A stretch of 64,000 bases of DNA from Octopus sinensis (taxonomy: Eukaryota): contig NC_043001.1 in NCBI RefSeq assembly GCF_006345805.1, forward strand, positions 114,638,001 to 114,702,000. The letters are read 5' to 3'. Below are positions 17,723 to 17,866 of the stretch, piece by piece. The notes under the pieces are model-generated. The model saw only the letters and a list, made by a program, of their open reading frames with translations, had not been told where the DNA came from and did not search any database. The position numbers and the translations under genes were made by a program. Every line of letters begins with the position of its first letter. Position 1 is the stretch's first letter.

Positions 17723-17866
17723 AATACCAAACGAGTTCCCTATGGATACCGTATTTATTACAACGAGTGGCTTGTAAACGTATCTAACGAGCGAAAGCGA
17801 GTTAGATACGTTTCCAAGCCACGAGTTGTAATAAATACGGTATCCATAGGGAATGAGTTTGGTATT
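17723..17866. repeat. 144-bp fold-back palindrome with tandem G-A steps
   Basis: ~66-bp arms around a C-GAAA-G loop; see findings. Confidence 0.9.

What the first reader, a model, noticed from the sequence alone, without database searches (positions are those of the whole stretch)
17723..17866. Long hairpin whose mismatches are tandem G-A/A-G steps, capped by GCGAAAGC: a ssDNA-folding signature
Seen: ~66-bp arms. At three positions both arms read (A)CGAG(T) in the same orientation (aaacgagttccc/gggaatgagttt; caacgagtggc/gccacgagttg; taacgagc-gaaa-gcgagtta). Each gives a tandem 5'-GA-3'/3'-AG-5' step flanked by pairs, and the apex is GC-GAAA-GC. Only about one other mismatch is present. Established: sheared tandem GA pairs in a Py-GA-Pu context and d(GCGAAAGC) are unusually stable in single-stranded nucleic acid. 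Inference: this pattern is unlikely from random decay of a perfect palindrome. It is strand-asymmetric (the other strand gives TC/TC mismatches) and resembles the imperfect hairpins read by ssDNA-acting (HUH or tyrosine-recombinase type) mobility systems. I cannot assign it to a named family.
Basis: partly seen in the sequence, partly recalled or inferred. Interest (0 to 1): 0.78.

Follow-up and report, generated by a model that had tools for sequence, protein, structure and literature searches.

The report
Giant GA-stepped hairpin ending a transposon
The hairpin is real and conserved, and it is one end of a roughly 590-base non-coding mobile element laid out like a rolling-circle (Helitron2/Helentron-type) transposon, but with an end hairpin about ten times longer than usual that keeps three deliberate G-A mismatch steps.

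Summary
Window 17723-17866 is a 70+70-nt hairpin capped by GCGAAAGC. Its only internal defects are three tandem GA/AG steps in ACGAGT boxes, one T·C mismatch and one G·T wobble.

It is not a lone oddity. Three more copies were found in anonymous metagenome or eukaryotic assemblies (L001, L002, L005), 76-89% identical. Across the four copies, 65 stem pairs are 98% paired and 19 changed on both sides (shuffles 7.5±2, 0/500). The two inner GA steps are unpaired in 4/4 copies. The outer step is unpaired in 3/4 and is paired only in the most decayed copy.

Homology continues past the hairpin. The unit runs about 17717-18309 on the minus strand. It starts with TTT plus a 12-nt inverted repeat, followed by a conserved ~130-nt module and a variable spacer. 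The partner inverted repeat sits directly before the hairpin. Flanks are unrelated, no target duplication is seen, and L001 and L002 show head-to-tail and 3'-truncated tandem junctions.

This layout matches Helitron2/Helentron (HINE) rolling-circle elements, except for the hairpin's size. No Rep/helicase partner could be found. Single-strand reading by an HUH enzyme is inferred, not shown.

The parts
17717..18309 (-). Whole non-coding mobile unit (about 593 bp); 5' end at 18309 and 3' end near 17717 in element orientation
   Evidence: Homology with L001, L002 and L005 covers the palindrome and a second module 290-420 nt away. It stops sharply at TTT[A/C]TTACAC, with four unrelated flanks. The 3' end is set by the L001 head-to-tail junction ...TCTCTAT|TTTATTACAC.
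18298..18309 (-). 5' terminus TTT plus the 5' asymmetric/subterminal inverted repeat (TTTATTACACAC)
   Evidence: 12/12 complementary to 17870-17881 (pair I5). The same pair is seen in L005 (12/12), L002 and L001 (24 nt, 87.5%). The window has an A:T pair where the other copies have C:G, a change on both repeats.
18166..18297 (-). Conserved 5' module B; holds CTCGGGTCATCACCATGG (18200-18217 on +), a CCAAT box (GACCAATCAG, 18221-18230 on +) and an ACATATGT palindrome
   Evidence: Alignments; BLAST L001 77-200 = window 18289-18166 at 73%.
17882..18165 (-). Variable spacer, differing in length and sequence between copies; contains the CRE-like TCACGTCAGTGACGTCACA at 17960-17978 (+)
   Evidence: no conserved blocks; spacer 285 nt in the window, about 377 in L001, about 190 in L005; motif counts.
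17870..17881 (-). 3' asymmetric/subterminal inverted repeat (GTGTGTAATAAA on the minus strand), immediately upstream of the palindrome
17723..17866 (.). Long palindrome: arms 17723-17792 and 17797-17866, apex loop 17793-17796, GCGAAAGC 17791-17798 on the + strand
17789..17800 (+). Apex GA step (G17789·A17800, A17790·G17799) around GC-GAAA-GC
   Evidence: Unpaired in 4 of 4 copies; GCGAAAGC is intact in 3 of 4 and reads GCGAGAGA in L005.
17765..17766 (+). Middle GA step, 5' arm (partner 17823-17824)
   Evidence: G·A/A·G in 4 of 4 copies (positions 27-28).
17823..17824 (+). Middle GA step, 3' arm
17733..17734 (+). Outer GA step, 5' arm (partner 17855-17856)
   Evidence: GA/AG in the window and L001; AA/GA in L002; converted to T·A plus T·G in L005 (positions 59-60).
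17855..17856 (+). Outer GA step, 3' arm; the adjacent C17854 has become T (ATGAGT), a CpG transition giving the G·T wobble
17717..17722 (-). 3' terminal tail (...TCTCTAT on the minus strand; ATAGAG on +)
   Evidence: ATAGA[G/A]AATA is conserved in all four copies and in the L001 solo arm; similarity ends within about 4 nt beyond it.

Best explanation
The hairpin is the 3'-terminal palindrome of a roughly 593-bp, non-coding, non-autonomous mobile element (window 17717-18309, minus strand).

The element's end architecture is that of Helitron2/Helentron-type rolling-circle transposons (their non-autonomous forms are called HINEs). It has a T-run at the 5' end and a 12-14-bp inverted repeat right at the 5' end. 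The partner repeat is subterminal and sits directly in front of a 3' hairpin. There is no target-site duplication, and copies are joined head-to-tail or after a 3' truncation.

Shown: the hairpin's stems are held complementary across diverged copies, while three CGAG/CGAG steps and the GCGAAAGC cap are held non-complementary. The palindrome therefore carries a built-in polarity.

Inferred: in active copies the hairpin forms in single-stranded DNA during rolling-circle transposition. A RepHel (HUH) transposase then uses it, with its three regularly placed 2x2 mismatch steps and its special cap, as the strand-specific end or termination signal.

Inferred alternative reading of the same boxes: six ACGAGT sites in direct orientation act as double-strand binding sites that orient the protein on an otherwise symmetric palindrome.
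For: (1) Family and covariation. The metagenome scan and the representative search gave L001, L002 and L005. In the gap-free four-copy alignment, 65 pairs are 98.1% paired. Nineteen pairs changed on both sides, against 7.5±2.0 in shuffles (0/500) and at most 1 in slid controls.

(2) Conserved mismatches. The inner two GA steps are unpaired in 4 of 4 copies and the outer in 3 of 4. The paired exception is in L005, which also has a decayed apex and extra mismatches.

(3) A unit larger than the hairpin. It has a sharp 5' boundary at TTT[A/C]TTACAC with four unrelated flanks, two conserved end modules and a variable middle.

(4) Inverted-repeat pair. It is 12/12 complementary in the window and in L005, with a change on both repeats in the window. 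The 3' member lies directly before the hairpin, as in the Helitron2 definition (PMC3627910) and in HINEs (PMC4067079; PMC7492417).

(5) No TSD is visible at three junction pairs.

(6) Tandem junctions. In L001 the 3' end abuts the next unit's 5' end. In L002 a 3'-truncated copy (1-241, 97.5% identical to 1082-1322) is joined exactly to the 5' terminus. This is the pattern reported for Helitron tandems (PMC7492417).

(7) Strand energies. The GA strand is favoured in all four copies: 4-14 kcal/mol with RNA parameters in the three copies tested and 0.1-5.9 with DNA parameters. d(GCGAAAGC) is an exceptionally stable DNA mini-hairpin (PMC13037366).
Against: No Rep/helicase or any other coding partner was found in the window, in L001 or L002 or in L005.

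The palindrome has 70-nt arms, against the 5-10-bp palindromes and 20-60-bp 3' offsets described for HINE and Helitron2 elements.

The 5' hairpin expected for Helitron2 is not significant.

A TT or T-rich target is not demonstrated. The one empty-site-like paralogue, in L002, reads T|A.

There are only four copies, all from unnamed assemblies. The copy number in the source genome is unknown, and the window holds one copy.

In the Helitron2 orientation the top strand carries T·C/C·T steps and a GCTTTCGC apex, so the stabilising GA features lie on the complementary strand.

The GNRA-type loop, the tandem GA steps and G·U tolerance would fit an RNA hairpin equally well.
Confidence: 0.5

Rival explanations
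1. It is a non-autonomous cut-and-paste or foldback-type element (a MITE) with no single-strand stage. The ACGAGT boxes are direct-orientation double-strand binding sites for a transposase or host factor.
For: The unit is short and non-coding, has 12-14-bp inverted repeats and a long palindrome. The boxes form a regular array of quasi-palindromic 10-mers such as CAACGAGTTG, identical in both arms in L001 and L002. The DNA-parameter asymmetry between strands is small.
Against: One inverted repeat is terminal while the other lies about 165 nt inside the element. No TSD is seen at three junction pairs. The precise head-to-tail and 3'-truncated tandem junctions are not typical of cut-and-paste MITEs. 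Strong selection for intrastrand pairing is not needed for double-strand binding sites.
Confidence: 0.2
2. The selected structure is an RNA. The window's + strand is transcribed into a long hairpin RNA with a C-GAAA-G tetraloop, tandem sheared G·A pairs and G·U wobbles, for example a transposon-derived hairpin-RNA or small-RNA precursor or a cis-acting RNA signal.
For: With RNA parameters the GA strand is 13.9, 11.8 and 4.4 kcal/mol more stable than the other strand. One-sided changes are mostly G·T on this strand (5-6) with one A·C. CCAAT, CRE-like and TATA-like motifs lie in the unit, and AATAAA follows the hairpin on the + strand in the window and L002.
Against: No Rfam family reaches its threshold; there are only generic long-hairpin matches to plant miRNA models far below cut-off. 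No expression data are available. The mobile-element anatomy with a sharp terminus and tandem junctions is not explained by an RNA gene. AATAAA is absent in L001.
Confidence: 0.12
3. It is the terminal hairpin of an integrated, degraded linear ssDNA virus of the parvovirus/densovirus type. Such telomeres are long imperfect hairpins, some with a functional mismatched bubble.
For: It is a long imperfect hairpin at one end of a unit, with conserved asymmetric mismatches and CRE- and CCAAT-type motifs next to it. By general knowledge this resembles parvoviral telomeres and their adjacent promoters.
Against: The unit is only about 470-700 bp between sharp ends in three loci. No NS/Rep or capsid remnant lies within ±6 kb in the window or on the loci. 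Three scans of the viral contig collection found nothing. The short inverted-repeat-plus-hairpin layout and the head-to-tail tandems fit a transposon.
Confidence: 0.04
4. It is chance, or the neutral decay of a once-perfect palindrome.
For: Some changes are plain CpG decay: ATGAGT in the window, ACAAGT in L002, ACTTGT and ATGAGT in L005.
Against: All three double mismatches have the same sequence in the same orientation and recur in homologues that differ at about 40% of stem positions. Nothing like it occurs elsewhere in 64 kb.
Confidence: 0.02

Closest known systems
Helitron2 group of Helitrons (Bao & Jurka 2013, PMC3627910) and Helentron/HINE elements, including DINE-1 and the oyster Cg_HINEs (PMC4067079, PMC7492417)
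   Same: Non-coding derivatives of a few hundred bp. T at or near the 5' end. An 8-15-bp inverted repeat that is terminal at the 5' end and subterminal at the 3' end. The 3' repeat is immediately followed by a hairpin. Two conserved end modules around a variable middle. No TSD. Tandem and 3'-truncated copies. HINEs are abundant in molluscs.
   Different: The 3' palindrome has 70-nt arms (144 nt) where described ones are 5-10 bp, so the 3' repeat is about 165 nt from the end where described ones are 20-60. The conserved tandem mismatch steps and the GCGAAAGC cap are not described for these elements. The 5' hairpin/IR is not significant here. No microsatellite or central tandem repeats. The RepHel partner and a TT target are not demonstrated.
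Canonical Helitron1 3' hairpin (5'-TC ... CTRR-3')
   Same: A 3' subterminal hairpin thought to act as the rolling-circle termination signal; no TSD.
   Different: No 5'-TC/CTRR-3' ends here. Helitron1 has no inverted repeats, and its hairpins are short (about 16-20 nt) and GC-rich.
Subterminal imperfect hairpins of IS200/IS605 elements and integron attC sites (prokaryotic ssDNA-recognised sites; general knowledge)
   Same: Structure is conserved more than sequence. Specific unpaired or extrahelical bases are conserved, make the hairpin strand-specific, and are read by the enzyme in ssDNA.
   Different: Those are prokaryotic, with hairpins of 20-60 nt. The asymmetry comes from bulged single bases, not tandem G·A steps. 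No homology or enzyme link was tested here.
d(GCGAAAGC) mini-hairpin at the phage G4 complementary-strand origin, and single-strand origins of rolling-circle plasmids
   Same: The same 8-mer caps the hairpin (PMC13037366). Long imperfect, orientation-specific ssDNA hairpins serve as signals on rolling-circle intermediates.
   Different: No evidence that this element makes a free ssDNA circle or needs priming. The similarity is to one 8-mer and a general shape only.
Parvovirus terminal hairpins with a functional mismatched bubble (for example the left-end hairpin of minute virus of mice; named only)
   Same: A long hairpin whose conserved asymmetric mismatch gives polarity to an HUH (NS1/Rep) reaction.
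   Different: No viral genes. The unit is under 1 kb with transposon-like ends, and no flip/flop forms were seen (4 of 4 copies have the same orientation relative to the flanks).

Membership tests
Helitron2 / Helentron-HINE | Short (8-15 bp) inverted repeats placed asymmetrically, with the 5' repeat 0-4 nt from the 5' end | tested here: met
   TTT plus [A/C]TTACACAC lies at the homology boundary in four copies with unrelated flanks. It is 12/12 or 14/14 complementary to its partner.
Helitron2 / Helentron-HINE | The 3' repeat is subterminal and immediately upstream of a 3' hairpin or palindrome | tested here: met
   GTGTGTAA[G/T]AAA directly precedes the palindrome in all four copies.
Helitron2 / Helentron-HINE | The 3' hairpin is short (5-10-bp palindrome; 3' repeat 20-60 bp from the 3' end) | tested here: not met
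   The arms are 70 nt and the 3' repeat is about 165 nt from the 3' end.
Helitron2 / Helentron-HINE | A 5' hairpin, or an IR complementary to the 5' repeat a few nt downstream | tested here: inconclusive
   TTCTTAC...GTGAGAA can pair in L002 and partly in the window, but the folds are weak (-1.4 to -3.2 kcal/mol) and no better than shuffles.
Helitron2 / Helentron-HINE | A 5'-terminal T or T-run; insertion into TT or T-rich sites without a TSD | tested here: inconclusive
   A 5' TTT is present in 4 of 4 copies and no TSD is seen at three junction pairs. The 3' end is known only to about 4 nt, and the single empty-site-like paralogue (L002 A' | C) reads T|A.
Helitron2 / Helentron-HINE | An autonomous partner with the same ends encoding Rep (HUH) plus helicase (with or without AP endonuclease) | not testable with these tools
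   No eukaryotic genome collection is available.
Helitron1 (canonical) | 5'-TC and CTRR-3' termini, insertion between A and T, no inverted repeats | tested here: not met
   The ends are TTT[A/C]TTACAC... and ...TCTCTAT, and inverted repeats are present.
TIR-MITE (cut-and-paste) | Inverted repeats at both extreme termini, flanked by a fixed-length TSD | tested here: not met
   One repeat is about 165 nt internal, and no TSD is seen.
Replitron | Short direct terminal repeats with a short right-end palindrome; hosts are plants, algae and protists | tested here: not met
   The definition is in PMC10288648. Here the repeats are inverted and the host is animal-like.
Known RNA families (Rfam 15) | A match at the gathering score | tested here: not met
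   No hit at gathering. Only sub-threshold long-hairpin matches, such as MIR821 at 60.9 bits against a 249-bit cut-off.

The most novel reading that the evidence does not exclude
An animal rolling-circle transposon lineage has expanded its 3' end signal into a 144-nt ssDNA rod. Its polarity is encoded by three evenly placed tandem sheared G·A (or, on the other strand, pyrimidine·pyrimidine) steps and a d(GCGAAAGC) mini-hairpin cap. This would be a structural bar code, read by the HUH transposase or used as a single-strand origin, of a kind not described for any eukaryotic mobile element.
Probability: 0.3. Interest if true: 0.75.

Novelty: new variant of a known kind. Interest (0 to 1): 0.55.

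Why it matters
How Helitron-type transposases recognise their 3' end is still poorly understood. The known hairpins are short and tolerate sequence changes.

This family has a very long hairpin. Nineteen compensatory changes show that pairing is selected in it. Three identical mismatch steps and a special cap are also kept. That gives a natural, information-rich substrate for asking which strand folds, what the enzyme reads, and whether non-Watson-Crick steps can encode polarity in ssDNA.

It also provides a simple, searchable signature for annotating a repeat family, probably molluscan, that does not appear in the literature searched: ACGAGT boxes flanking GCGAAAGC, together with the TTTCTTACACAC/GTGTGTAAGAAA repeats.

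Tried and rejected
- Exact look-ups of the two spurious ORFs across the hairpin found nothing.
- Word-indexed protein searches with the hairpin pseudo-peptide and with a three-copy pseudo-peptide alignment found nothing.
- Scans of viral contigs and of bacterial/archaeal genomes with apex or architecture patterns returned zero hits.
- P0040 is a singleton cluster, so it led to no further copies.
I inspected stop-to-stop segments across 11-25 kb instead and saw nothing coding.
- Pfam on the L005 genes gave no families.
- Rfam gave nothing at gathering score, and the permissive hits are noise.
- ARAGORN found no tRNA.
- The RT-like ORF at 36665-37177 was used to identify the host. It gave only anonymous ENA contigs and one Mytilus coruscus name, so the taxon stays 'animal, possibly mollusc'.
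- Searches of the oyster HINE supplement and of full text for the inverted-repeat 12-mers gave no relevant match.
- The clam DTC84 element has only a 12-nt palindrome.
- The Replitron layout does not fit.
- The 5' hairpin test was negative or inconclusive.

Full report
**1. The observation**

The window is eukaryote-like. It has 32-37% G+C, no long real ORFs, abundant microsatellites, and no tRNA or Rfam hit.

At 17723-17866 the sequence is a hairpin with 70-nt arms and a GAAA loop inside GCGAAAGC. Laid out arm against arm, its defects are:
- tandem G·A/A·G steps at positions 3-4, 27-28 and 59-60 from the apex;
- one T·C mismatch at position 18;
- one G·T wobble at position 58, next to the outer step.

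Each step lies in an ACGAGT-type box that reads the same way in both arms. The repeat finder reports 81-nt arms at 85% complementarity. Both strands fold as ssDNA at about -63 kcal/mol with z about -18 to -20.

The hairpin is unique in the window. A dedicated scan found no other hairpin in 64 kb with a same-strand GA/GA step between paired flanks, apart from one microsatellite artefact.

**2. It is a conserved family**

I scanned the metagenome collection with a pattern that fixed only the apex and the two neighbouring boxes. It returned two contigs, L001 and L002. An exhaustive HMMER search with the pseudo-peptide read across the hairpin returned one 46-aa ORF call (P0040). That ORF sits on a 36.9-kb anonymous ENA contig, L005.

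The four palindromes are 76-89% identical. After removing a 2-nt bulge in L001 they align without gaps. On that alignment, one search gives:
- 65 stem pairs, 98.1% paired;
- 19 pairs with changes on both sides, against 7.5±2.0 in column shuffles (0/500) and at most 1 when partners are slid by 1-3 columns.

So intrastrand pairing is maintained through many compensatory changes.

The mismatch steps are not repaired:
- The apex and middle steps are G·A/A·G in 4 of 4 copies.
- The outer step is G·A/A·G in the window and L001.
- In L002 the outer step is A·A/A·G, after a CpG-type G-to-A change.
- In L005 the outer step is paired. Its 5'-arm box reads ACTTGT, the complement of ACGAGT after a CpG transition.

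L005 also has a decayed apex (GCGAGAGA) and two extra mismatches, so it looks like an old, dead copy. The adjacent two-base change in L005 that restores pairing looks like templated quasi-palindrome correction (inference). This suggests the steps would be erased unless they are kept by selection in active copies.

**3. The hairpin is one end of a larger unit**

BLAST and alignments show a second conserved module (B, window 18166-18297) 190-380 nt from the palindrome.

Homology ends sharply at TTT[A/C]TTACAC (window 18309), with four unrelated flanks. This 12-14-mer is the exact inverted complement of the sequence just before the palindrome. It is 12/12 in the window (17870-17881 against 18298-18309) and 12/12 in L005. 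The matching 12-mers are also present in L002, and in L001 the repeat is 24 nt at 87.5%. The window carries an A:T pair where the others have C:G, a change on both repeats.

The spacer between the modules varies in length and sequence.

At the other end, ATAGA[G/A]AATA is conserved in all copies, and similarity ends within about 4 nt. Two tandem junctions help fix the ends:
- In L001 the first unit's ...TCTCTAT is followed directly by TTTATTACAC and a weakly similar, collinear second unit (score 44 against shuffles of 28±4, maximum 42). That second unit ends in a solo copy of one arm (1226-1304).
- In L002 a stretch of the spacer (1082-1322) is repeated at 1-241 (97.5% identical). There it is joined exactly to the 5' terminus of the full unit. 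This is a 3'-truncated copy followed by a full copy, or possibly a nested insertion.

No target-site duplication is visible at three junction pairs. No coding remnant lies nearby.

The unit in the window is about 17717-18309, on the minus strand.

**4. What it works like**

The published definitions fit the layout. They are Helitron2 (PMC3627910) and Helentron/HINE (PMC4067079; PMC7492417). Their features are:
- a 5' T;
- short inverted repeats placed asymmetrically, terminal at the 5' end and subterminal at the 3' end;
- the 3' repeat immediately upstream of a 3' hairpin;
- two conserved end modules;
- no TSD;
- tandem copies truncated at the 3' end.

Bao & Jurka also report compensatory mutations that maintain these features. 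They propose that pairing of the two repeats sets the rolling-circle end point.

The best explanation is therefore a non-autonomous Helitron2/Helentron-like element whose 3' hairpin is the end signal.

What differs or is missing:
- The hairpin is about ten times longer than described ones.
- The 5' hairpin is not significant.
- The TT target and the RepHel partner could not be tested.

For these reasons I do not file it as a proven member.

**5. Which strand, and DNA or RNA?**

The GA strand is favoured in every copy. With RNA parameters the advantage is 13.9, 11.8 and 4.4 kcal/mol in the three copies tested. With DNA parameters it is only 0.1-5.9 kcal/mol. That DNA model has no special terms for sheared tandem G·A pairs or for the d(GCGAAAGC) mini-hairpin, whose Tm is about 76 °C (PMC13037366).

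One-sided changes are mostly G·T on the GA strand (5-6), with one A·C. This is a weak hint that this strand's fold is the one preserved.

However, in the conventional Helitron2 orientation the GA strand is the complement of the top strand. The top strand would carry three pyrimidine·pyrimidine bubbles. Which strand is read, or whether the six boxes act as direct-orientation duplex sites, remains open. An RNA hairpin cannot be excluded.

**6. Rivals**

I considered a cut-and-paste MITE/foldback element, an RNA hairpin gene, a parvovirus-like telomere and chance. They are weighed in the Rival explanations section. The anatomy of the ends and the tandem junctions argue against the first three, and conservation argues against chance.

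**7. Host**

The only clue is a decayed RT/HTH_animal fragment at 36665-37177. Its relatives lie on anonymous Mb-scale ENA contigs, and one is a Mytilus coruscus protein. The host is an animal, possibly a mollusc; this is not established.

**8. Verdict**

The feature is real, conserved and structured. It is most likely the oversized, polarity-marked end hairpin of a Helitron2/Helentron-like non-autonomous transposon, a new variant of a known kind. The ssDNA/HUH reading is plausible but unproven.

Noticed in passing
window 17960-17978, 18221-18230, 18080-18093; L001 213-250, 478-500, 844-915: The unit carries promoter-like motifs: overlapping CRE-like TCACGTCAGTGACGTCACA, a CCAAT box (GACCAATCAG) conserved in three copies, and a TATAAAAAAA stretch. 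L001 has 10 TGACGT hexamers in 1364 nt (about 0.7 expected); L002 has none.
   Followed up: partly
window 17400-17595 (minus strand): Directly beside the element lies a sequence that looks like a tRNA-derived SINE head on the minus strand (T-arm-like GAGTTGGATTCCCGGACC). ARAGORN calls no tRNA there.
   Followed up: no
window 36665-37177 (+): A decayed reverse-transcriptase-associated fragment (hits carry PF26215 HTH_animal and PF00078). Its best relatives are 43-61% identical on anonymous ENA contigs, and one is a Mytilus coruscus RT-domain protein.
   Followed up: partly
window 60201-61674: Non-LTR retrotransposon fragments: an AP-endonuclease-like piece (…ISAHAPT…, + strand) and a C-terminal CPHC…H…H zinc-knuckle tail (minus strand, 61366-61674). 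The weak 'EGR N-terminal' Pfam hit at 61170-61547 (E = 0.04) is probably spurious.
   Followed up: partly
window 48001-52000 and 5480-7728: Strong strand composition skew at 48-52 kb (GC skew 0.295, AT skew 0.207), coinciding with low-complexity repeats. Long CAT/CAC-type and TA/CA microsatellite tracts produce all the 'long ORFs' at 5.5-7.7 kb.
   Followed up: no
L001 1226-1304: A solo copy of one palindrome arm (79% identical to window 17711-17790), without the other arm or the 3' inverted repeat, at the end of a weakly similar second unit. It looks like a hairpin-mediated deletion derivative.
   Followed up: partly
all four palindromes (positions 14, 15, 29, 58, 59 and 71 from the apex): Single-sided changes in the stems are almost all G·T on the GA strand (5-6 cells), with one A·C. 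This could reflect selection on that strand's fold or strand-biased cytosine deamination. The sample is too small to decide.
   Followed up: partly
L005 9640-9780 and 10730-10860: Two copies of another dispersed repeat flank the element on L005 (…GCTACTCTTT…ATTAGCA…CCTTTGTTC[CT]ACCAGT[TC]GTGGA…). From memory it resembles repeats common in bivalve genomes. Not tested.
   Followed up: no
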